From sequence record OR805292.1: DNA of 64,000 nucleotides, one strand, 5' to 3'. The notes under the pieces are model-generated. The model saw only the letters and a program-made list of their open reading frames with translations. It ran no database searches and was not told where the DNA came from. This document shows positions 1 to 50,960 of this stretch, one piece after another; position 1 is the stretch's first letter; the number at the start of each line of letters is the position of its first letter. The position numbers and the translations under genes were made by a program.

Positions 1-380
1 TTAACGGGGTAGTAGTAGGGCAAGCTTTCCCGCTCTACAGCACAAAAACCCAGCGTAGCTGGAACGCGAGCATGCACGCTACCGTTAACGGCGTAGAGGT
101 GCAGTTTGCACAGGAAGGCGTGTTCAGTGCAATCCGCATTGCACGGGCGTTCGAGGATGCAGTAAAGCATGCCGTTAGCAACGGCGAACAAGGGCAACCC
201 CTCCCCGCGCCGGCGGCGGCAGAAGCGCAAGCAGAAGCGCAAGCAGAAGCGCAAGCAGAAGCCCCGGTAGCGCAGACCGAGGATGCGCCGGAGACCCCGG
301 CAGCCGAAGCTAAGCCCGCCCGCAAAGGCGGCAGCAAAGGCGGCAGCAAAGGCGGCAGCAAAGGCGGCAGCAAAAAGTAA
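1..380 (+). CDS. 5'-truncated early protein with Ala/Glu/Lys-rich low-complexity tail; paralog of 7188..7646
   Basis: Frame is open from the window edge (NGVVVGQAFPLYSTKTQRSWNASM...). It shares KTQRxW and GVFSAIRIARA with 7188..7646, is GC-rich in codon use, and has tandem AEAQ x3 and KGGS x4. Confidence 0.85.
   Translation, partial: NGVVVGQAFPLYSTKTQRSWNASMHATVNGVEVQFAQEGVFSAIRIARAFEDAVKHAVSNGEQGQPLPAPAAAEAQAEAQAEAQAEAPVAQTEDAPETPAAEAKPARKGGSKGGSKGGSKGGSKK
324..371 (+). repeat. 12-bp tandem repeat x4 (AAAGGCGGCAGC, encodes KGGS)
   Basis: Read directly. A second 12-bp repeat, GCAGAAGCGCAA x3, lies at 219-254. Confidence 0.95.
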
Positions 381-394
381 GCGCTGCTAACACA

Positions 395-422
395 GGAAAG
401 GGGCAACTGCCCCTTTCCTTTT
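395..422 (+). terminator. Rho-independent terminator (early-region GGGGC/GCCCC family)
   Basis: GGAAAGGGGC-AACT-GCCCCTTTCC followed by TTTT, directly after a stop codon. Confidence 0.9.
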
Positions 423-432
423 ATGTCCTAGT

Positions 433-459
433 TGTAAACGCAAATTAATCTTATTTGCA
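433..459. promoter_or_regulatory. 27-bp quasi-palindromic Fur-box-like site (representative of the family)
   Basis: TGTAAA-CGCAAAT-T-AATCTTA-TTTGCA. The half-site TCTTATTTGCA occurs 12 times exactly, in either orientation, between 449 and 8680. Confidence 0.75.
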
Positions 460-2959: not shown

Positions 2960-3265
2960 ATGTCAGCAGAATTGAAGCGGTTGTTAGAGATTTTTCCAAC
3001 CTTTAAATCATTCATTTATGCTGAAGGGGCATATGGCATTGATGTTTGGAAGGCTACGGGTAGTGTTACTTTGGAACAGGTATTCAATGCTGTTAATGCA
3101 GGTAATGCAGAATGGCAATGTAAAGGTGATCCAACATGCAGCCTGGAACAAAACAGCATGTATATTTTTATTACTATTCGGGAACCAGACTACACAGGAA
3201 TGGTTGACATCGATGTTTGTGTAAAGATTACTAACGGTAATGAAGTAAGTTACCAAATAGCATAA
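2960..3265 (+). CDS. hypothetical protein (101 aa)
   Basis: CAGGAG SD; terminator at about 3268-3294. Confidence 0.8.
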   Translation: MSAELKRLLEIFPTFKSFIYAEGAYGIDVWKATGSVTLEQVFNAVNAGNAEWQCKGDPTCSLEQNSMYIFITIREPDYTGMVDIDVCVKITNGNEVSYQIA

Positions 3266-3401
3266 TAAAGGAAAGGGGCAACTGCCCTTTTTCTTATGAC
3301 CATTGATGCAAACTATTCTTATTTGCACATCAAAAAAATATCTATTGAATTCTATCAATATGATGCTATTATATATAGTGTAATTAACTAGGAGTAAAGT
3401 T

Positions 3402-7187: not shown

Positions 7188-7646
7188 ATGACCAAAGCAA
7201 CCGTTACCGTCGAGCAATCCGCAATCAAACTGGTTCGCCGCAACCTGGAAGGGCACCGGCAAGCCCTGTTGCTGAACGGCGTCGAAGTAGGCAGCAGCGA
7301 AGCGTTCTACAAGACCAAAACCCAGCGCACCTGGTCGGCGAAGATCGACGCCAACATCAACGGCAAGGACATCGTCCTCGAACAGAAAGGCGTGTTCAGC
7401 GCGATCCGGATCGCCCGGGCGATGGAACAAGCAATCCTGTTCATCCTGACCGACGGCAAAGAAGGCGCCGAGATGCCGGCCAGCACGCTGAGCAAGGAAG
7501 AGCAAGCCCACAACCTGGTCAAGGCAGTAGTCCAGGTCGCCGGCCACGCAGTCCAGTCCGGCGCCGAGGGCAAGGGCGATGCCGACGCTGCCCCGGCGAA
7601 GAAAGGCAGCTCGAAGAAGCGCAAAGAAGCCCAGCCGGAAGCATAA
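7188..7646 (+). CDS. early protein, paralog of <1..380, GC-rich host-like codon usage
   Basis: AGGAG SD; shared GVFSAIRIARA block; basic Ala/Lys tail. Confidence 0.9.
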   Translation: MTKATVTVEQSAIKLVRRNLEGHRQALLLNGVEVGSSEAFYKTKTQRTWSAKIDANINGKDIVLEQKGVFSAIRIARAMEQAILFILTDGKEGAEMPASTLSKEEQAHNLVKAVVQVAGHAVQSGAEGKGDADAAPAKKGSSKKRKEAQPEA

Positions 7647-9827: not shown

Positions 9828-10097
9828 ATGGATGCGCGTAGCCTGCTTAACCTTATCGAAGACCTCCCTATAGCTGTCTTCGGTAGCACAATGGATATTG
9901 TTCATCGAGTCAATTTTGAAGCTCTGGACAATGCCGCTCACACCGACGGGGTAAAAGTCCACGAAGATGGAACCAACCGTTATACGGACGCTTTTGTCGA
10001 TTGTTGGCTCTGCAGCGTCGAAACAATTTTGGCCTGTTGCGATTTTGTGACTGAGGACGCAGCGAAGTGGTATATCGAGCACGGTGTCAAGTTTTGA
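9828..10097 (+). CDS. hypothetical protein (89 aa)
   Basis: GGAG SD; plausible codon usage. Confidence 0.75.
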   Translation: MDARSLLNLIEDLPIAVFGSTMDIVHRVNFEALDNAAHTDGVKVHEDGTNRYTDAFVDCWLCSVETILACCDFVTEDAAKWYIEHGVKF

Positions 10098-10127
10098 CAT
10101 CCTCTGCCTCGCTTGCAGATAAAAAGG

Positions 10128-10156
10128 TTGACGTAGACTAGCATTGGACACATAAT
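10128..10156 (+). promoter_or_regulatory. sigma70 promoter, second class (AAGGTTGACGT...CATAAT)
   Basis: TTGACG-N17-CATAAT; sister copy TTGACG-N18-CATAAT at 11214-11243. Confidence 0.75.
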
Positions 10157-10210
10157 AATCACAACACAGCGCAACACAATGCAACGCAACCAGCCCAGGA
10201 GGGCAAAACT

Positions 10211-10360
10211 ATGTGCAACATCCAATGCATGAACAGCAAAGCAGGCGAGTCCTACGCATGGATTTGGAGCGATAGTGATAACGATATCTGCTACGAAGTC
10301 ATCTTCAGGCATGGCCAGGTCATTACCCAGGTTTGGCTCGGCTATGATATTGTAGCCTAA
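10211..10360 (+). CDS. 49-aa hypothetical protein (not in track)
   Basis: CAGGAGG SD; MCNIQCMNSKAGESYAWIW...; terminator at 10369-10393. Confidence 0.65.
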   Translation: MCNIQCMNSKAGESYAWIWSDSDNDICYEVIFRHGQVITQVWLGYDIVA

Positions 10361-10409
10361 CACCAACTAAAGCCCCGTCCCAGGCGGGGCTTTACCGAAG
10401 GAAAAGATC

Positions 10410-10619
10410 ATGATCGAACAACTGAAAGACATGCTCGTAGCGCAACGCATGCGCATGAACCAACTCGAAAAACTGCGCTACACCGGACGGGTCGCTAGCG
10501 AGTTGCATGCCCACGCCAGGGAATTGTGTGAAGCCTTGGAACTGGCAATTGCAAATGCCCAGTGCCTGGAAATGCGCAAGCCCGAAGAAGCCGCCCTGCA
10601 CGCCCTGTTCGCACAATAA
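10410..10619 (+). CDS. small coiled-coil protein (69 aa)
   Basis: AAGGA SD; GC-rich. Confidence 0.75.
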   Translation: MIEQLKDMLVAQRMRMNQLEKLRYTGRVASELHAHARELCEALELAIANAQCLEMRKPEEAALHALFAQ

Positions 10620-10652
10620 CCCACCACGCACAACCCGACAAGGAAACCAACC

Positions 10653-11144
10653 ATGAGCACCACAATCCCTGTTTCGATTAACCCAAGTGATCTTCCTGAA
10701 ATCGGCCAGCCGCTGGCCGATGGAACCTTCTTTGCCCGCCAATGGCTCAATGGCAAGGAATACGCCTACGTCGATCTCGGCAAAAGCGCCGAGTTCACTG
10801 GAGAATGGGGCGAGTATGGGCAGGACGTGGTCGGCGCCGTCAGCTATCGAGACGGAGCTTCGAACACGGTCGCCATGGCTGAAGCTGGCAGCCCGATTGC
10901 TAAGCAAGCTATGGAGATCGGAGAAGGCGTATTCATTCCCTCTGTTCTGGAACTGGCTCTTCTGTTCTCCGCCAAGCAAGCAGGCGAGCTGTCTGGTTTC
11001 GCAGATCGCTGGTACTGGTCGAGTTCGCAGTACTCCGCATGCGGCGCCTTCAACACGCACCTCGGCGACGGTGACACAGGTCTCGACCCCAAGTACGTCT
11101 ACTTCCGTGTCCGACCCGTCCGCAAGATTCTCATCCTTCAGTAA
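10653..11144 (+). CDS. DUF1566 / Lcl C-terminal (C-type-lectin-fold-like) protein
   Basis: FIPS..EL, WYWSSSQYS and terminal FRVRPVR motifs, typical of the family seen in Pseudomonas temperate phages. Confidence 0.85.
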   Translation: MSTTIPVSINPSDLPEIGQPLADGTFFARQWLNGKEYAYVDLGKSAEFTGEWGEYGQDVVGAVSYRDGASNTVAMAEAGSPIAKQAMEIGEGVFIPSVLELALLFSAKQAGELSGFADRWYWSSSQYSACGAFNTHLGDGDTGLDPKYVYFRVRPVRKILILQ

Positions 11145-11282
11145 TATAGCCCCGGCGAGCAAACATTGCTCGGAAGGTGCTAACTGAACGACTGGCGGAA
11201 CAATAAATAAAGGTTGACGTGCGTCTAGCGGCGGATGCATAATAGCTACAAGACAACACAGCAAGCCCCGGAGGGCGCAACC

Positions 11283-11483
11283 ATGTCCCAGATCGTAGAT
11301 GTCAAGCAAATTGCAATTGATGCAAACCGTCGCCCGGCCTACAATGCGGTCATGGTGCGCTGGTTGATGCAGGAAGCTGAATTGCACCGTAGCTGCGGAC
11401 GCACCGCTACCCTGTTCTGCATCGTTCGCAACCGCCCCGACGGCACACAGCGCCAGCTTGTGCAGCTTGTGGCTAGCGAATAA
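11283..11483 (+). CDS. hypothetical protein (~66 aa)
   Basis: GGAGG SD supports MSQIVDVK over the track start of 11235. Confidence 0.7.
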   Translation: MSQIVDVKQIAIDANRRPAYNAVMVRWLMQEAELHRSCGRTATLFCIVRNRPDGTQRQLVQLVASE

Positions 11484-11513
11484 CCTCAATCACCCTACGC
11501 CCAGGAGACCGCC

Positions 11514-11681
11514 ATGAACGCCGCATTGGCCAGACTTCAAAACGAGCGCTGTGTGCTACTCCGCCGCATGCTTTGCCTTCATCGGTGGGGTGGCTTTAGC
11601 TTTGCCGGCCACCCGTGGGCGGAGCAAGCCCGCAGTTTGCACGACGAAGCCGAGTGCGTCCGAGAACATCACAGTAAGTAA
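11514..11681 (+). CDS. 55-aa hypothetical protein (not in track)
   Basis: CAGGAG SD; MNAALARLQNERCVLLRR...HHSK. Confidence 0.65.
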   Translation: MNAALARLQNERCVLLRRMLCLHRWGGFSFAGHPWAEQARSLHDEAECVREHHSK

Positions 11682-48495: not shown

Positions 48496-48993
48496 TTATT
48501 TACTCAGCTGTTTTACTTTCTCTTTATTCTCTTCTGTCCAGAAATTATTCCAACTACAGAATACCCAACCCTTATAATCTATACTATTATTTACTTTAAT
48601 ACCGGTTTTTTCTTCAAATACTACCCATTTGCCTTGCCGCGTTATTTTTATAAAAATAATATTAAAATCACCCTCGCTAGCAGTATCGCGTACCTGTGAT
48701 ATCCATGTATCTAACTGTTTGCACTCTCCTTCGAACAACGAAGTAAATGAAAATTTTGCATACGATTTACATTCAGAATTAAAATGTTCCCATGTATCCG
48801 GAGGGAAAATATCACCTTTATAGGATTTGATTTGATTATTACCTAGTGATGTTTTTCTGACAGAATTTTGTCCTCCTATAAAGGCACCTGAATGTGCTGT
48901 TCTGGTAAAGGGTTCGTTGTAAAATGAGGTAAGATCTTTTGCTACATCTCGTTCCCAGCTACTACCTTTAATTTTACTTTTCGATCCAGACAT
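48496..48993 (-). CDS. Holliday junction resolvase (Hjc-like PD-(D/E)XK)
   Basis: SK.KGSSWERDVA..L, GDI and ECKSY motifs. Confidence 0.85.
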   Translation of the reverse strand: MSGSKSKIKGSSWERDVAKDLTSFYNEPFTRTAHSGAFIGGQNSVRKTSLGNNQIKSYKGDIFPPDTWEHFNSECKSYAKFSFTSLFEGECKQLDTWISQVRDTASEGDFNIIFIKITRQGKWVVFEEKTGIKVNNSIDYKGWVFCSWNNFWTEENKEKVKQLSK

Positions 48994-49124
48994 GTTTTGT
49001 TAACCTTTTATATACCTGTTAAATTTTACATTATTTAGTTAATTTTATACCCATATAATACTGTCGAGATAAATATGTGTGTAGATAACTTATAGCATTA
49101 TTTTTAACGATTTTAGTACAATGG

Positions 49125-49153
49125 TTGACAGTATTAATGTCGTATGCTATAAT
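49125..49153 (+). promoter_or_regulatory. perfect consensus sigma70 promoter
   Basis: TTGACA (49125-30)-N17-TATAAT (49148-53), with extended -10 TG. Confidence 0.9.
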
Positions 49154-49159
49154 CCGCAA

Positions 49160-50065
49160 CATAATAAAACTAAAGGACGTATGTAACAAAACAGACGTTC
49201 TCCTAAGTGTTTTAAAGTTTTTGCTTAGGAAGACCCAGTTGTATGTTTAAAGGGTGAACGGTAACGGGCATTCTTGTTTAAGACTAGTTCTTATGAAGAC
49301 ATTGGCAACTAACATAGCAGCTTTGTTCCATAATTGGATATTGGTAGTAGAAACTATCCCCATCGTGCCTTTACTGTAGTACCGTTAGAGACGGAGATAA
49401 CGCAGGAAAAAAGGTTATTTAAATTATGATTTTGGGTGCTGCAGAACACTTTCGTAAACAAAAGGAATATAGTTTACGTATACACAACGGGAACGGGAAA
49501 AAGCTTTTTAAGCAAAAACGAGTCCCTGGTAATTGGTGTTTAACGGGAGTGACGTCCCAAATGTTATCCATCGATTAACACTGTAAGAAGGTTGTAAGGG
49601 TTATTGTGTTCGAAGTGGTTTACACAACTGTTCTTCCTACATTTATGTACAGAAGTGTAAACGAAAGGATGTTGCTCTGGTAGAAAAAGATCAACGTACT
49701 TTATGACACTATCCTTGTGACATATGTACTTGTACCAACAACAGCCGCAGGTTACGGATATGGTATTACAAACTGTACTGCGGTTCCGGGAGTTGAAAGT
49801 GGATGTTAGCTTAGGTGGCTGTTTGCTTAATTATAATGTTTAATTTAGGCAATATAAGCGTCGGGTGAGGCTTTCGTAGGTTGCGTGTTTATGCTACGGT
49901 GTAAATGGGCTAGACTACTGGCGCATACATGAGTATTGTAGGATTGGCGCTTTAATAAAGAAATTTGTTAAAGTTTGAGTTTAGCTCCCCGCTCATTAGC
50001 AATAAACGTTGCTAGTCGATAGTATACCCACGCCTAAATAATGCCGTCATTGTTTAGTTTTTTTT
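49160..50065 (+). ncRNA. candidate ~900-nt large structured non-coding RNA
   Basis: Consensus promoter, no ORF >=60 aa, 5'/3' closing helix, many nested helices with G-U pairs, a cUACGg tetraloop and a T8 end. Confidence 0.7.
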
Positions 50066-50097
50066 AAAAAATATAATTGTCAATTATATGTCGTACG

Positions 50098-50126
50098 CAT
50101 CTACCCCGAAAAGGGGTAGATGTTTA
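50098..50126 (+). terminator. strong hairpin/terminator
   Basis: CATCTACCCC-GAAAA-GGGGTAGATG then TTT. Confidence 0.75.
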
Positions 50127-50507
50127 TGACTTTCGTTTACACTCATGTCATAATCAGTACACGCCATTTTAGGCCATTCTACATCAATACACTGCTTCTA
50201 GCAGTGTATTGGACATACAAAATAATCTTAAATTATATCAAATTTGTTTAATTACTTTAATTTTGTTACTTTAGTAATTTGTATTTTGTTTATATGAGTT
50301 GTAGTTTACGAAAACGAATATAAACAAAATACATATGTGAACTGTAGTTCACATACTTACTAACGTTGTATATTACGGTAATTCTATAAAATATCTCTAT
50401 ATAATTATAAACGTTTTATGGCATACTACGACTGAACGAAATTGAAAATTAACTAGAGATTTAATTAGATAAATAATATTGTAAAAATTGTATAGAGGTA
50501 TACATCA

Positions 50508-50960
50508 ATGAACGATTACACACATTACACAGAGGAAGATTTCATATTTTTAGCATATGATTTAAATACTCAGCTTATAAATGATGGATATCCTGACGCT
50601 GCTGTAAAATTTATTACTAATCAGTTTATTTTAGAGCATAGACATCCTGACGAAATAAAACGTTGTATAGGATGTAATTCTAAAATGTACGAAGATGTTA
50701 TTGCTACTAAGAGAAATTTATCTGGTAAATCGCATTGCAGACATTGCGAATCGAAACTTAGTATGTATAAGGAAGTTGTTAAGGAAGTAGCAAATACAAC
50801 ACAAATACTTCGCATACCAGAAAAACATTTAAATTCAGTTAAACGATTAATTAGAATATATAATGAGCAAAACAAAACTAGTGCATATCAGAGTATATTA
50901 GTTAAAACAAAGAAACTTAACACAGGAGTTTCTAAAAAGTCAAAAAGAAAGGGACGTTAA
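50508..50960 (+). CDS. zinc-ribbon (CxxC..CxxC) protein with RHH-like segment and basic tail (150 aa)
   Basis: CIGC and CRHC; TTQILRIPEKHLNSVKRLI; KKSKRKGR tail; late motif at 50468. Confidence 0.75.
   Translation: MNDYTHYTEEDFIFLAYDLNTQLINDGYPDAAVKFITNQFILEHRHPDEIKRCIGCNSKMYEDVIATKRNLSGKSHCRHCESKLSMYKEVVKEVANTTQILRIPEKHLNSVKRLIRIYNEQNKTSAYQSILVKTKKLNTGVSKKSKRKGR

What the first reader, a model, noticed from the sequence alone, without database searches (positions are those of the whole stretch)
49125..50126. Candidate ~900-nt, highly structured non-coding RNA driven by a perfect sigma70 promoter
Seen in sequence: a 1.5-kb gap with no ORF >=60 aa in an otherwise densely packed genome. It contains the only perfect TTGACA-N17-TATAAT promoter I found in the window (49125-49153), plus a late GATAAATAT motif upstream (49068). 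The transcribed segment looks G/T-skewed and GC-richer than its flanks. Its ends can close a helix: AAAACTAAA 49166-74 with TTTAGTTTT 50053-61, and GACG 49176-79 with CGTC 50045-48, ending in T8. Internal helices include TCCTAAGTG/TGCTTAGGA (49201/49222), AACAGCC/GGCTGTT (49740/49817), CCGCAG/CTGCGG (49745/49778), ATTTAGGC/GCCTAAAT (49843/50032), AAGCGTC/GGCGCTT (49856/49946), a cUACGg-capped stem (49887-49906) and TAGCAA/TTGCTA (49997/50009). Established: large 'ornate' bacterial and phage RNAs (GOLLD, ROOL, OLE, HEARO) fall in this size range. I recognise no tmRNA, RNase P or intron signature. Inference: a possibly new large phage ncRNA, acting as an RNP scaffold, a decoy or an R-loop primer RNA.
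Basis: partly seen in the sequence, partly recalled or inferred. Interest (0 to 1): 0.92.

Follow-up and report, generated by a model that had tools for sequence, protein, structure and literature searches.

The report
Three-copy structured RNA gene in jumbo phage
The ORF-free gap very probably holds a ~0.9-1 kb folded non-coding RNA gene with its own strong promoter, the largest of three related copies in this Pseudomonas jumbo phage; one copy was already seen as a transcript in phage PA5oct, and the function is unknown.

Summary
Window 48994-50507 has no ORF above 52 aa. It carries the window's only perfect TTGACA-N17-TATAAT (49125-49153), is GC-richer than its flanks, and folds far better than shuffles (z = -5.0).

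The window is Pseudomonas phage Cassandra, a PA5oct-like jumbo phage (genus Wroclawvirus). The main new result is that the element has two paralogues elsewhere in the genome, each with its own sigma70 promoter and terminator. One of them is PA5oct 'ncRNA004', annotated from RNA-seq as a putative lncRNA.

The three copies share:
- a 131-nt core domain with four compensatory base pairs;
- collinear short motifs;
- about ten helices at equivalent positions whose sequences are unrelated.

G-U pairs put the function on the + strand. No Rfam family matches. No homologue turned up outside Wroclawvirus in GenBank phages or, by exact-motif scans only, in IMG/VR, JGI metagenomes and GTDB genomes.

I read it as a real structured ncRNA gene family (about 0.9). 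Function is inferred only. A trans-acting protein-binding scaffold or decoy made early in infection is my first choice. An origin-linked primer RNA is the main rival. This copy has no direct transcript evidence.

The parts
49125..49153 (+). Sigma70 promoter: TTGACA, 17-nt spacer, TATAAT, with TG upstream of the -10
   Evidence: It is the only perfect match in the window and one of 8 in the genome. Paralogue B has another perfect one (L007 20870-20898). Paralogue C has TTGACA-N17-TAAACT (L006 17248-17276).
49160..50127 (+). Predicted RNA 'copy A', about 906 nt if it ends at the U8 run (50065) or about 968 nt if it ends after the GC hairpin. The start is inferred from the -10 position.
   Evidence: Ends are inferred from the promoter and terminators and by analogy with PA5oct ncRNA004, which runs from its promoter to its terminator. 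MFE z = -5.0. There are no transcript data for this copy.
49160..49316 (+). 5' leader specific to copy A (hairpins 49175-49200 and 49201-49230). B and C have only 34-47 nt here.
49317..49442 (+). Conserved core domain: closing helix GCAGC/GCUGC, hairpins UCCA/UGGA and GGUAGU/ACUAUC (AGAA loop), helix CCCAUCGUG/UAUGA-UGGG, hairpin CCGUU/GACGG, helix UAAC/GUUA
   Evidence: A 36-nt and a 26-nt block are invariant in all three copies. RNAalifold gives 33 pairs, 4 of them compensatory. On 6 rows 98% of cells are paired, against 31-54% when partners are slid. The covariance model scores 148-157 bits on the three copies and at most 17 bits anywhere else in the genome.
49444..49611 (+). H7: outer helix GAACAC/GUGUUC enclosing hairpin CGUAAAC/GUUUACG (49453-49478), whose loop carries AAAAGGAAU, plus a ~125-nt insertion specific to copy A
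   Evidence: B and C have 8-bp hairpins of unrelated sequence at the same distance after the core, with AAGGAU and AAGGAC loops.
49618..49662 (+). H8 hairpin (GUUUACAC/GUGUAAAC) ending directly before AAAGGAUG
   Evidence: Equivalent hairpins of 12 bp (13 positions, one mispaired; B) and 7 bp (C), with different sequences.
49664..49692 (+). Block 2: invariant AAAGGAUG, 2 nt, GCUCUGGU, then a hairpin with a GUAGAAA-type loop
   Evidence: Across the three RNAs AAAGGA occurs 7 times (0.82 expected) and GTAGAAA 5 times (0.36 expected).
49696..49729 (+). H10 hairpin (GUAC...GUAC with inner UUAUG/CAUA and CAC/GUG)
   Evidence: Hairpins at the same position in B (UUGUAU/AUACAA) and C (CUUUCAGU/ACUGAAAG).
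49734..49789 (+).
   Evidence: ACCAAC and UUCCGG are shared by all three copies. H11 is 8, 11 and 12 bp in A, B and C, with unrelated sequences and G-U pairs that are valid only on the + strand.
49790..49984 (+). Variable 3' region, expanded in copy A. It includes the UACG-capped stem near 49887-49906.
   Evidence: It cannot be aligned with B or C apart from a UUGAAAGU-like loop after UUCCGG.
49985..50018 (+). CCCCGCUC block (49987-49994), which is CCCCGCCUC in B and CCCGCCUC in C, followed by hairpin UAGCAA/UUGCUA
   Evidence: Read by eye. The hairpin is in the MFE.
50034..50065 (+). First terminator-like element: AU-rich 10-bp hairpin plus U8
   Evidence: The simple scan did not call it because it has fewer than 3 GC pairs. 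PA5oct has U7 here.
50098..50127 (+). Second terminator: CAUCUACCCC/GGGGUAGAUG hairpin followed by UUUAU
   Evidence: The equivalent GC-rich hairpins of B and C sit where PA5oct ncRNA004 is annotated to end.
50277..50355 (.). Downstream module: long AT-rich hairpin (arms 50277-50305 and 50308-50336) followed by a 10-bp hairpin (50334-50355)
   Evidence: All three copies have one. A and C share an identical 32-nt centre, while the outer stem differs and stays paired. The small hairpin reads as a terminator on the - strand. Whether it belongs to the RNA gene or is a DNA-level element is unknown.

Best explanation
Window 49125-50127 (+) is an independent gene for a large structured non-coding RNA. 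It is the longest of three paralogues in Wroclawvirus (PA5oct-like) jumbo phages, a family that includes PA5oct 'ncRNA004'.

Shown or directly supported:
- Host RNA polymerase has a consensus sigma70 promoter to start from.
- The transcript region has a conserved multi-helix architecture on the + strand.
- It ends at intrinsic terminators.
- A paralogue is transcribed mainly early in infection.

Inferred mechanism: the RNA acts in trans as a folded scaffold or decoy. Its invariant 131-nt core, together with recurring exposed motifs, binds a host or phage protein early in infection. The motifs are ANGGA in a hairpin loop and in a linker, and GUAGAAA(C)-type loops. Three copies give dosage or slightly different specificities.

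Confidence is split: about 0.9 that this is a genuine structured ncRNA gene of this family, and about 0.4 that it works as a trans-acting protein-binding RNA. The figure given is for the whole statement.
For: Paralogy:
- BLAST finds two further copies in the same genome.
- A covariance model of the core scores 148-157 bits on exactly three loci and at most 17 bits elsewhere in 288 kb.

Structure:
- The core has 4 compensatory pairs among 33. 98% of cells are paired, against 31-54% for slid controls.
- Ten helices occupy equivalent positions in A, B and C with unrelated sequences. Several contain G-U pairs that would be A-C on the other strand.
- MFE z-scores are -5.0, -4.4 and -4.0.

Expression:
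- Copy C coincides with PA5oct ncRNA004. That feature is annotated from RNA-seq, from just after the promoter to the terminator, at 0.08%, 0.03% and 0.02% of phage reads in early, middle and late infection.
- Two of the genome's eight perfect sigma70 promoters drive copies A and B.
- PA5oct relies on host RNA polymerase.

Not coding:
- No ORF exceeds 52 aa.
- The 50-aa ORF that starts in the core is cut to 7 and 14 codons in B and C.
- No ORF piece reaches significance in Pfam or PHROGs; the best E-values are 0.18 and 0.2.

Recurrent exposed motifs:
- AAAGGA occurs 7 times against 0.82 expected, and GTAGAAA 5 times against 0.36.
- They lie in loops or linkers.

GC is 37-39% against 33% for the genome and 20-31% in the spacers downstream.
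Against: - There is no transcript evidence for copy A itself. PA5oct and Cassandra annotate tiny CDSs here.
- There are only three independent sequences, from one genus. Strain variants are at least 98% identical, so covariation statistics are weak and the long-range helices are untested.
- The measured abundance of paralogue C is low, which does not suit a stoichiometric sponge.
- No partner protein is identifiable. Neighbouring genes have no informative domains.
- No antisense target exists in the phage genome. The host genome was not searched for targets.
- Every copy is followed by an AT-rich region with a conserved long hairpin. A purely trans-acting model does not explain this.
Confidence: 0.45

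Rival explanations
1. Origin-linked primer or R-loop RNA. On this view each of the three units is a replication origin. A strong host-polymerase promoter makes a folded RNA that hybridises to, or is processed at, the AT-rich hairpin region downstream. That primes or opens DNA for the phage replisome. The analogues are ColE1 RNA II and the T4 oriF/oriG transcripts.
For: - All three copies have the same layout: promoter, structured RNA, then an AT-rich spacer (GC 0.20-0.31) holding a 55-60-nt hairpin. The outer stem of that hairpin covaries and its centre is identical in A and C.
- Two of the three copies sit where gene orientation switches from - to +.
- The low abundance of ncRNA004 fits a cis-acting role better than a sponge.
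- The phage has T4-like recombination and replication genes, including SbcCD directly upstream, and an RNase H-like protein is reported.
- The AT-rich region after copy C has 27-nt direct repeats.
Against: - Each RNA ends at one or two intrinsic terminators before the AT-rich hairpin, and the RNA-seq annotation of ncRNA004 stops there.
- A 131-nt core with about 60 invariant bases and recurring loop motifs is more than R-loop formation needs.
- Cumulative GC and AT skew follow gene orientation only and show no origin signature at the loci.
- Copy B lies inside a co-oriented gene block.
Confidence: 0.2
2. A specific form of the decoy idea: a phage-made sponge or target for the host CsrA-family regulators RsmA and RsmF. 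These would be bound through ANGGA motifs in a hairpin loop and in a single-stranded linker, shifting host post-transcriptional control.
For: - The invariant AAAGGAUG lies between two hairpins.
- An (A)AGGA(U/C/A) motif sits in the loop of the first hairpin after the core, in all three copies.
- From my own knowledge, CsrA/RsmA sites are A(N)GGA in loops or linkers, with SELEX consensus near CANGGAYG.
- AAAGGA is about 8-fold enriched.
- These phages depend on host stationary-phase signalling to replicate in dormant cells, so host regulators are plausible targets.
Against: - There are only 2-3 such sites per 540-970 nt, and GGA overall is not enriched (33 against 26.5 expected). Known sponges carry many sites in 110-370 nt.
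- The third AAAGGA of copy A is GAA in PA5oct.
- No Rfam hit to RsmY, RsmZ or CsrB at E <= 10 for copy A, and none at gathering score for B or C.
- I see no GacA-box-like palindrome upstream.
- It does not explain the invariant core.
Confidence: 0.08
3. A selfish or decaying element. On this view it is an ORF-less remnant of a mobile intron or of another repeated mobile sequence that has spread to three sites, with structure kept for mobility or with no benefit to the phage.
For: - Three dispersed copies, with insertions and deletions specific to each.
- The genome is rich in homing endonuclease genes.
- A conserved hairpin module travels with each copy.
Against: - No group I or group II intron model matches even at E <= 10.
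- The copies are intergenic with their own promoters and terminators, not inside host genes.
- There are no terminal repeats or target duplications.
- The copies are old (about 56% mean column identity across the whole aligned unit), yet they keep about 60 invariant bases and compensated helices, which indicates selection on the RNA.
Confidence: 0.06
4. Short protein-coding genes, as currently annotated in GenBank (Cassandra_0457-0462; PA5oct gp338-gp341), or a long cis-regulatory leader for the downstream 150-aa gene.
For: The depositors annotated 31-51-aa CDSs here, and some PA5oct CDSs were added on the basis of RNA-seq coverage.
Against: - The two annotations disagree with each other in strand and frame.
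- The ORFs are not conserved between paralogues.
- No family match reaches significance.
- Substitutions are compensatory in helices rather than synonymous.
- Two terminators and about 380 nt of AT-rich spacer separate the RNA from the next gene.
Confidence: 0.04

Closest known systems
PA5oct ncRNA004 ('putative lncRNA', NC_071039 246116-246734; Lood et al. 2020, PMC7318152)
   Same: It is a true paralogue. It has the same 131-nt core (152-157 bits with one model), the same order of motifs and helices, the same kind of promoter, terminator and downstream hairpin, and the same strand.
   Different: - Copy A is about 350 nt longer. It has a 157-nt leader, a ~125-nt insertion in H7 and an expanded 3' region.
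- It has a perfect promoter, where ncRNA004 has a -10 of TAAACT.
- It is annotated as small CDSs, not as RNA, in the two annotated records read here, Cassandra and PA5oct; several of the other nine list only hypothetical proteins or no feature under the match.
- The passages of the paper retrieved here (term search) say the ncRNAs lack similarity to known GenBank sequences and mention neither paralogy nor a structure.
Large 'ornate' bacterial and phage RNAs (GOLLD, ROOL, OLE, HEARO, raiA)
   Same: Size class (0.5-1 kb), multi-domain conserved structure, a phage setting (as for GOLLD and ROOL), own promoter, unknown function.
   Different: No match to any of their Rfam models, even at E <= 10. 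Known from one phage genus only. Three paralogues per genome.
ColE1 RNA II and T4 oriF/oriG origin transcripts
   Same: A strong host-polymerase promoter, a folded transcript several hundred nt long, and an AT-rich region with hairpins downstream.
   Different: Intrinsic terminators lie between the RNA and the AT-rich region. No sequence or model similarity. No evidence of DNA initiation.
CsrB/RsmY/RsmZ protein-sponge RNAs
   Same: ANGGA motifs in a hairpin loop and in a linker, conserved in all three copies.
   Different: Few sites, much larger RNA, no overall GGA enrichment, no model match, no Gac-type upstream element.
Structured RNA next to the PD-(D/E)XK gene in related uncultivated jumbo phages (IMG/VR contigs behind L018, L059, L022, L021)
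   Same: The same neighbourhood (SbcCD, PD-(D/E)XK nuclease, RNA, baseplate hub, tape-measure-like gene), an ORF-free stretch richer in GC, and covariation-supported structure (18 compensatory pairs of 112).
   Different: About 330 nt, directly behind the nuclease gene with no consensus promoter seen by eye (no scan was run), no sequence similarity and no hit by the core model. Homology is therefore unproven.

Membership tests
Wroclawvirus ncRNA004-type RNA | Homologous 131-nt core domain with the same helices | tested here: met
   The covariance model scores 156.8 bits on window 49315-49446. The only other hits above 17 bits in the genome are copies B and C.
Wroclawvirus ncRNA004-type RNA | Collinear downstream motifs (AAAGGAUG-GCUCUGG, ACCAAC, UUCCGG, CCCGC(C)UC) and helices H7-H11 at equivalent positions | tested here: met
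   the CCCGC(C)UC block was read by eye.
Wroclawvirus ncRNA004-type RNA | Own sigma70 promoter and intrinsic terminator | tested here: met
Wroclawvirus ncRNA004-type RNA | Discrete transcript detected during infection | not testable with these tools
   RNA-seq annotation exists only for copy C. Read data were not available for copy A.
GOLLD / ROOL / OLE / HEARO / raiA (Rfam) | Match to the family covariance model | tested here: not met
   No Rfam family reaches its gathering score in the window. At E <= 10 there are only chance-level hits to unrelated families. Copies B and C have none either.
Group I / group II introns | Match to the intron models, and insertion within a host gene with exons | tested here: not met
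   No model hit. The element is intergenic with its own promoter and terminator.
RNase P RNA, tmRNA, 6S, SRP RNA, tRNA | Match to the family model or ARAGORN | tested here: not met
CsrB/RsmY/RsmZ sponges | High density of GGA motifs | tested here: not met
   GGA occurs 33 times against 26.5 expected; 41 of 500 shuffles reach that.
CsrB/RsmY/RsmZ sponges | ANGGA presented in hairpin loops or single-stranded linkers | tested here: met
   Two conserved sites per copy, the H7 loop and the AAAGGAUG linker. AAAGGA occurs 7 times against 0.82 expected.
CsrB/RsmY/RsmZ sponges | Match to the Rfam models, and a Gac-dependent upstream element | tested here: not met
   No hit at E <= 10. By eye there is no TGTAAG-N6-CTTACA-like palindrome in 49000-49125.
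ColE1 RNA II / T4 oriF-type origin transcript | Promoter-driven transcript upstream of an AT-rich unwinding region | tested here: met
ColE1 RNA II / T4 oriF-type origin transcript | Transcript runs into the origin region without terminating | tested here: not met
   Terminator hairpins precede the AT-rich hairpin in all copies, and ncRNA004 is annotated to end there. Read-through cannot be excluded.
ColE1 RNA II / T4 oriF-type origin transcript | RNA-DNA hybrid formation and DNA synthesis starting at the site | not testable with these tools
   This needs DRIP, marker-frequency or nascent-strand data.

The most novel reading that the evidence does not exclude
This is a previously unrecognised class of large (0.55-1 kb) multi-domain RNA, present in three paralogous, strongly promoted copies. 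So far it is confined to the one phage genus reported to replicate lytically in deep-dormant P. aeruginosa. On this reading the RNA forms a defined particle, alone or with a host protein, that reprogrammes host physiology early in infection, and this contributes to the genus's unusual ability.
Probability: 0.12. Interest if true: 0.85.

Novelty: new member of a known kind. Interest (0 to 1): 0.6.

Why it matters
Few large structured RNAs of phages are known, and their functions are largely open. This family offers three natural variants in cultivable phages of a laboratory host (PAO1), which makes genetics, probing and structure work feasible.

The phages concerned (Paride, Cassandra, PA5oct) are studied for therapy and for killing dormant cells (PMC10761892). 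An abundant class of unannotated early RNA genes in them is therefore relevant to understanding their infection programme.

On a practical level, the small CDSs annotated across these loci in GenBank are probably spurious. The three loci should be annotated as one RNA family. A seed alignment for a new Rfam family could be built from them.

Tried and rejected
- **Rfam.** All 4227 families gave nothing at gathering score on the window, or on copies B and C. Permissive mode on 48900-50600 also gave nothing.
- **tRNA and tmRNA scan.** Nothing.
- **BLASTN, near and distant, against 50,697 phage records.** Only the 11 Wroclawvirus genomes match, all at 99% or more.
- **Exact or degenerate scans of the most conserved motifs.**
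  - IMG/VR: 4 scans.
  - JGI metagenomes: 1 scan.
  - GTDB genomes: 1 scan.
  - Result: no match, or chance matches inside unrelated, mostly coding-looking, sequence.
  - These scans need exact motif matches, so distant homologues could be missed.
- **Relatives fetched through the neighbouring nuclease gene.** 43 loci were fetched. The core model, run on 15 of them, found nothing, and BLAST against all 43 found nothing. The gene flanking copy C has no relatives in IMG/VR.
- **MAFFT/RNAalifold outside the core.** The diverged hairpins are misaligned, so I tabulated helices by hand and checked the pairing by script.
- **Pseudogene or small-protein reading.** ORF pieces gave no significant Pfam or PHROG match.
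- **Antisense targets of the invariant loops within the phage genome.** None.
- **Replication-origin signal in cumulative skew.** Skew follows gene orientation only.
- **Strain-level SNPs.** There are too few to test covariation: 6 differences in A and 12 in C between Cassandra and PA5oct.
- **Kinship with PA5oct ncRNA001, 002 and 003.** For ncRNA001 and ncRNA002 no alignable similarity to A, B or C appeared; apart from a shared 12-mer in ncRNA001 they are unrelated sequences. ncRNA003 was not compared directly: its locus was fetched, and only the whole-genome BLAST of copy A bears on it.
Full report
**What the window is.** The region is 100% identical to Pseudomonas phage Cassandra (OR805292.1, positions 234990-236510). 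It is 99.1-99.9% identical to ten other PA5oct-like jumbo phage records (genus Wroclawvirus, the only genus of Arenbergviridae) and matches nothing else among 50,697 phage records, even with sensitive BLASTN. The window corresponds to Cassandra 186001-250000. Upstream lie SbcD/SbcC-like genes (+), a 249-aa gene and a 165-aa nuclease gene (both -). Downstream lie a 150-aa gene (+), a baseplate-hub gene (-) and a 798-aa structural gene (+). The nuclease is annotated 'RusA-like', but Pfam places it in PDDEXK_15.

**Checking the observation.**
- Between 48994 and 50507 the longest ORF in any frame is 52 aa.
- TTGACA-N17-TATAAT lies at 49125-49153 with a TG before the -10. It is the only perfect match in the window, where 0.09 are expected.
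- The whole 288-kb genome has eight perfect matches.
- GC is 0.38-0.42 and GC skew is positive over 49200-50000, while the flanks are at 0.25-0.33.
- Folded from 49160 to 50130, the RNA reaches -276 kcal/mol against -239 +/- 7 for dinucleotide shuffles (z = -5.0).
The exceptions are listed in the observation check.
- Two terminator-like elements close the unit. One is an AU-rich hairpin (50034-50057) with U8 (50058-65). The other is a GC-rich 10-bp hairpin (50098-50122) with a short U tail.

**The key finding is three paralogues.** BLAST of the gap against the rest of the genome finds two more places on the same strand.
- Copy B is at Cassandra 170.9-171.4 kb (L007 20870-21442). This corresponds to PA5oct 12.8-13.4 kb, inside the 39-kb terminal repeat.
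- Copy C is at Cassandra 117.2-117.9 kb (L006 17248-17898).
- Both lie in gaps that hold only tiny annotated ORFs.
- Copy B has another perfect TTGACA-N17-TATAAT. Copy C has TTGACA-N17-TAAACT.
- Both end in GC-rich hairpins.
- Copy C coincides with the PA5oct feature 'ncRNA004, putative lncRNA, annotation based on RNA-Seq data' (246116-246734). That feature starts 17-18 nt after the -10 and ends just past the hairpin.
- Lood et al. report it at 0.08%, 0.03% and 0.02% of phage reads at 5, 15 and 25 min. They also report that the phage uses host RNA polymerase.
- A member of the family is therefore experimentally a transcript with the predicted borders.
- In PA5oct and in Cassandra, copy A is annotated as small CDSs that disagree between the two records.

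**Conserved architecture.** The copies are about 970, 537 and 615 nt long.
- *Core domain.* The shared 131-nt core (A: 49317-49442) contains a 36-nt and a 26-nt block that are invariant. RNAalifold predicts 33 pairs in seven helices.
  - The closing helix changes from GCAGC/GCUGC to GUGGC/GCCAC.
  - An inner hairpin changes from CCGUU/GACGG to CUGUU/GACAG and to CCGAU/GUCGG.
  - That gives four compensatory pairs.
- *Pair counts.* On six rows (Cassandra plus PA5oct), 98% of cells pair. Sliding the partners gives 31-54% paired and 0-1 compensatory pairs.
- *Beyond the core.* Sequence identity is lost, but short motifs stay in the same order (the last one was read by eye): AAAGGAUG-NN-GCUCUGG, ACCAAC, UUCCGG and CCCGC(C)UC.
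- *Helices between the motifs.* Between these motifs each copy has a helix at the same place with an unrelated sequence. All pairings were checked by script:
  - H7 outer and inner;
  - H8;
  - the block-2 hairpin;
  - H10;
  - H11 (8, 11 and 12 bp);
  - the terminator.
- *Strand.* H11 and the core contain G-U pairs, so the folded strand is the + strand.
- *Stability.* Copies B and C also fold better than shuffles (z = -4.4 and -4.0).
- *Size difference.* Copy A is larger because of a 157-nt leader, a ~125-nt insertion inside H7 and an expanded 3' region.

**Not coding.** The ORF beginning at the core's AUG is 50 codons in A, 7 in B and 14 in C. The ORF pieces give no significant Pfam or PHROG match.

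**Recurring motifs.** AAAGGA occurs 7 times in the three RNAs (0.82 expected; 0 of 500 shuffles reach it). GTAGAAA occurs 5 times (0.36 expected).
- The paralogues share ancestry, so these counts are not independent. Even so, each RNA carries each motif at least twice, except that C has GUUGAAA in its second loop.
- They lie in the H7 loop, in the linker before block 2, in the core's third hairpin and in the block-2 loop.
- GGA as such is not enriched.
- The third AAAGGA of copy A is GAA in PA5oct.

**A module downstream.** After the terminator, each copy has an AT-rich spacer (GC 0.20-0.31). The spacer holds a 55-60-nt hairpin followed by a shorter hairpin.
- A and C share an identical 32-nt centre, whereas the outer stems differ yet stay paired.
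- Copies A and C sit where gene orientation switches from - to +.
- Copy C is followed by 880 bp of AT-rich, repeat-bearing DNA.

**What it is not.**
- No Rfam family matches A, B or C. That covers GOLLD, ROOL, OLE, HEARO, raiA, group I and II introns, RNase P, tmRNA, 6S, and CsrB/RsmY/RsmZ.
- There are no tRNAs in the window.
- The core model finds exactly three loci in the genome.
- Motif scans of IMG/VR, JGI metagenomes and GTDB genomes gave no match or only chance matches.
- The full-text library holds no paper that describes this family beyond the PA5oct table entry.

**How it most likely works.**
- *Shown:* the promoter, the terminators, the strand-specific conserved fold, the paralogy, and a paralogue that is transcribed mainly early.
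- *Inferred:* a trans-acting folded RNA whose invariant core and exposed repeated motifs bind a protein partner.
- *Against this view:* the low read share of ncRNA004, and the unexplained downstream hairpin module.
- *Main rival (0.2):* the units are origins whose RNA primes or opens the AT-rich region, as with ColE1 RNA II or T4 oriF. The layout and the positions fit. The terminators, the elaborate invariant core and the absence of a skew signal argue against it.
- *Narrower idea (0.08):* binding of host RsmA or RsmF through the two ANGGA sites. This rests on my recollection of the CsrA consensus and on few sites.
- *Unlikely:* a mobile-element remnant or small coding genes.

**Context.** Cassandra was isolated with Paride as one of the close relatives able to replicate on deep-dormant P. 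aeruginosa. This trait needs host RpoS and (p)ppGpp signalling (PMC10761892). Nothing links the RNA to that trait, but the trait makes the family worth testing.

**Verdict.**
- The ncRNA reading is supported, at about 0.9 for 'structured RNA gene'.
- The function is open.
- Novelty is moderate: it is an unannotated paralogue of an RNA already listed as a putative lncRNA, and the three together define a new structured RNA family restricted to one genus.
- Interest is 0.6.

Noticed in passing
L018 4610-4925 (IMGVR_UViG_3300027736_001324, a 263.7-kb contig); also L019, L059, L022, L021: Related uncultivated jumbo phages have an ORF-free stretch of ~330-480 nt directly after their PD-(D/E)XK nuclease gene and before the baseplate-hub gene.
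- It is 76-78% identical between contigs.
- It has a consensus structure of 112 pairs, 18 of them compensatory, and ends in two hairpins.
- It has no Rfam match and no sequence similarity to copies A, B or C.
It may be a second unknown structured RNA at the syntenic site.
   Followed up: partly
window 49031-50251; L001 and L002: GenBank annotates 4-6 CDSs of 31-51 aa across the RNA (Cassandra_0457-0462; PA5oct gp338-gp341).
- The two records disagree in strand and frame.
- The ORFs are not conserved in the paralogues and have no significant family match.
They are probably annotation artefacts.
   Followed up: yes
window 48496-48993 (-): The gene annotated 'RusA-like Holliday junction resolvase' matches Pfam PDDEXK_15 (phage putative PD-(D/E)XK endonuclease; E = 1.8e-28), not RusA. 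MIJ3 calls it 'D14 protein/putative resolvase'.
   Followed up: partly
window 31-390 and 7200-7640: Two islands with GC 0.61-0.63 in a 33% GC genome. They are about 70% identical over 119 nt and look coding; the first ends in a tandemly repeated codon unit. They may be paralogous GC-rich morons, perhaps acquired from a host. Another GC-rich stretch (0.49-0.58) spans window 10000-11600.
   Followed up: partly
window 396-450, 1273-1327, 1989-2047, 3263-3295: A ~55-nt element containing the hairpin AGGAAAGGGGCAACUGCCCCUUUCCU recurs four times within 3.3 kb, apparently as a repeated terminator between small early genes.
   Followed up: no
L003 8300-8330 (PA5oct ncRNA001) and L006 17564-17575: The highly expressed PA5oct ncRNA001 contains AAGGAUGAUGCU. 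The same 12-mer forms block 2 of copy C. In ncRNA001 it lies in a predicted stem. It could be chance or a shared binding motif.
   Followed up: no
L003 21951-22401 (PA5oct ncRNA002; Cassandra L007 29877-30332): ncRNA002 is GC-rich, abundant (up to 5% of phage reads) and 93% identical between PA5oct and Cassandra. The Cassandra copy, inside L007, has no Rfam match at gathering score. It is another uncharacterised RNA of this phage.
   Followed up: partly
L006 18120-18146 and 18184-18210 (downstream of copy C): Two 27-nt direct repeats (96% identical) and many inverted repeats lie in an 880-bp ORF-free stretch with GC 0.20. This looks iteron-like or like a cluster of early promoters.
   Followed up: no
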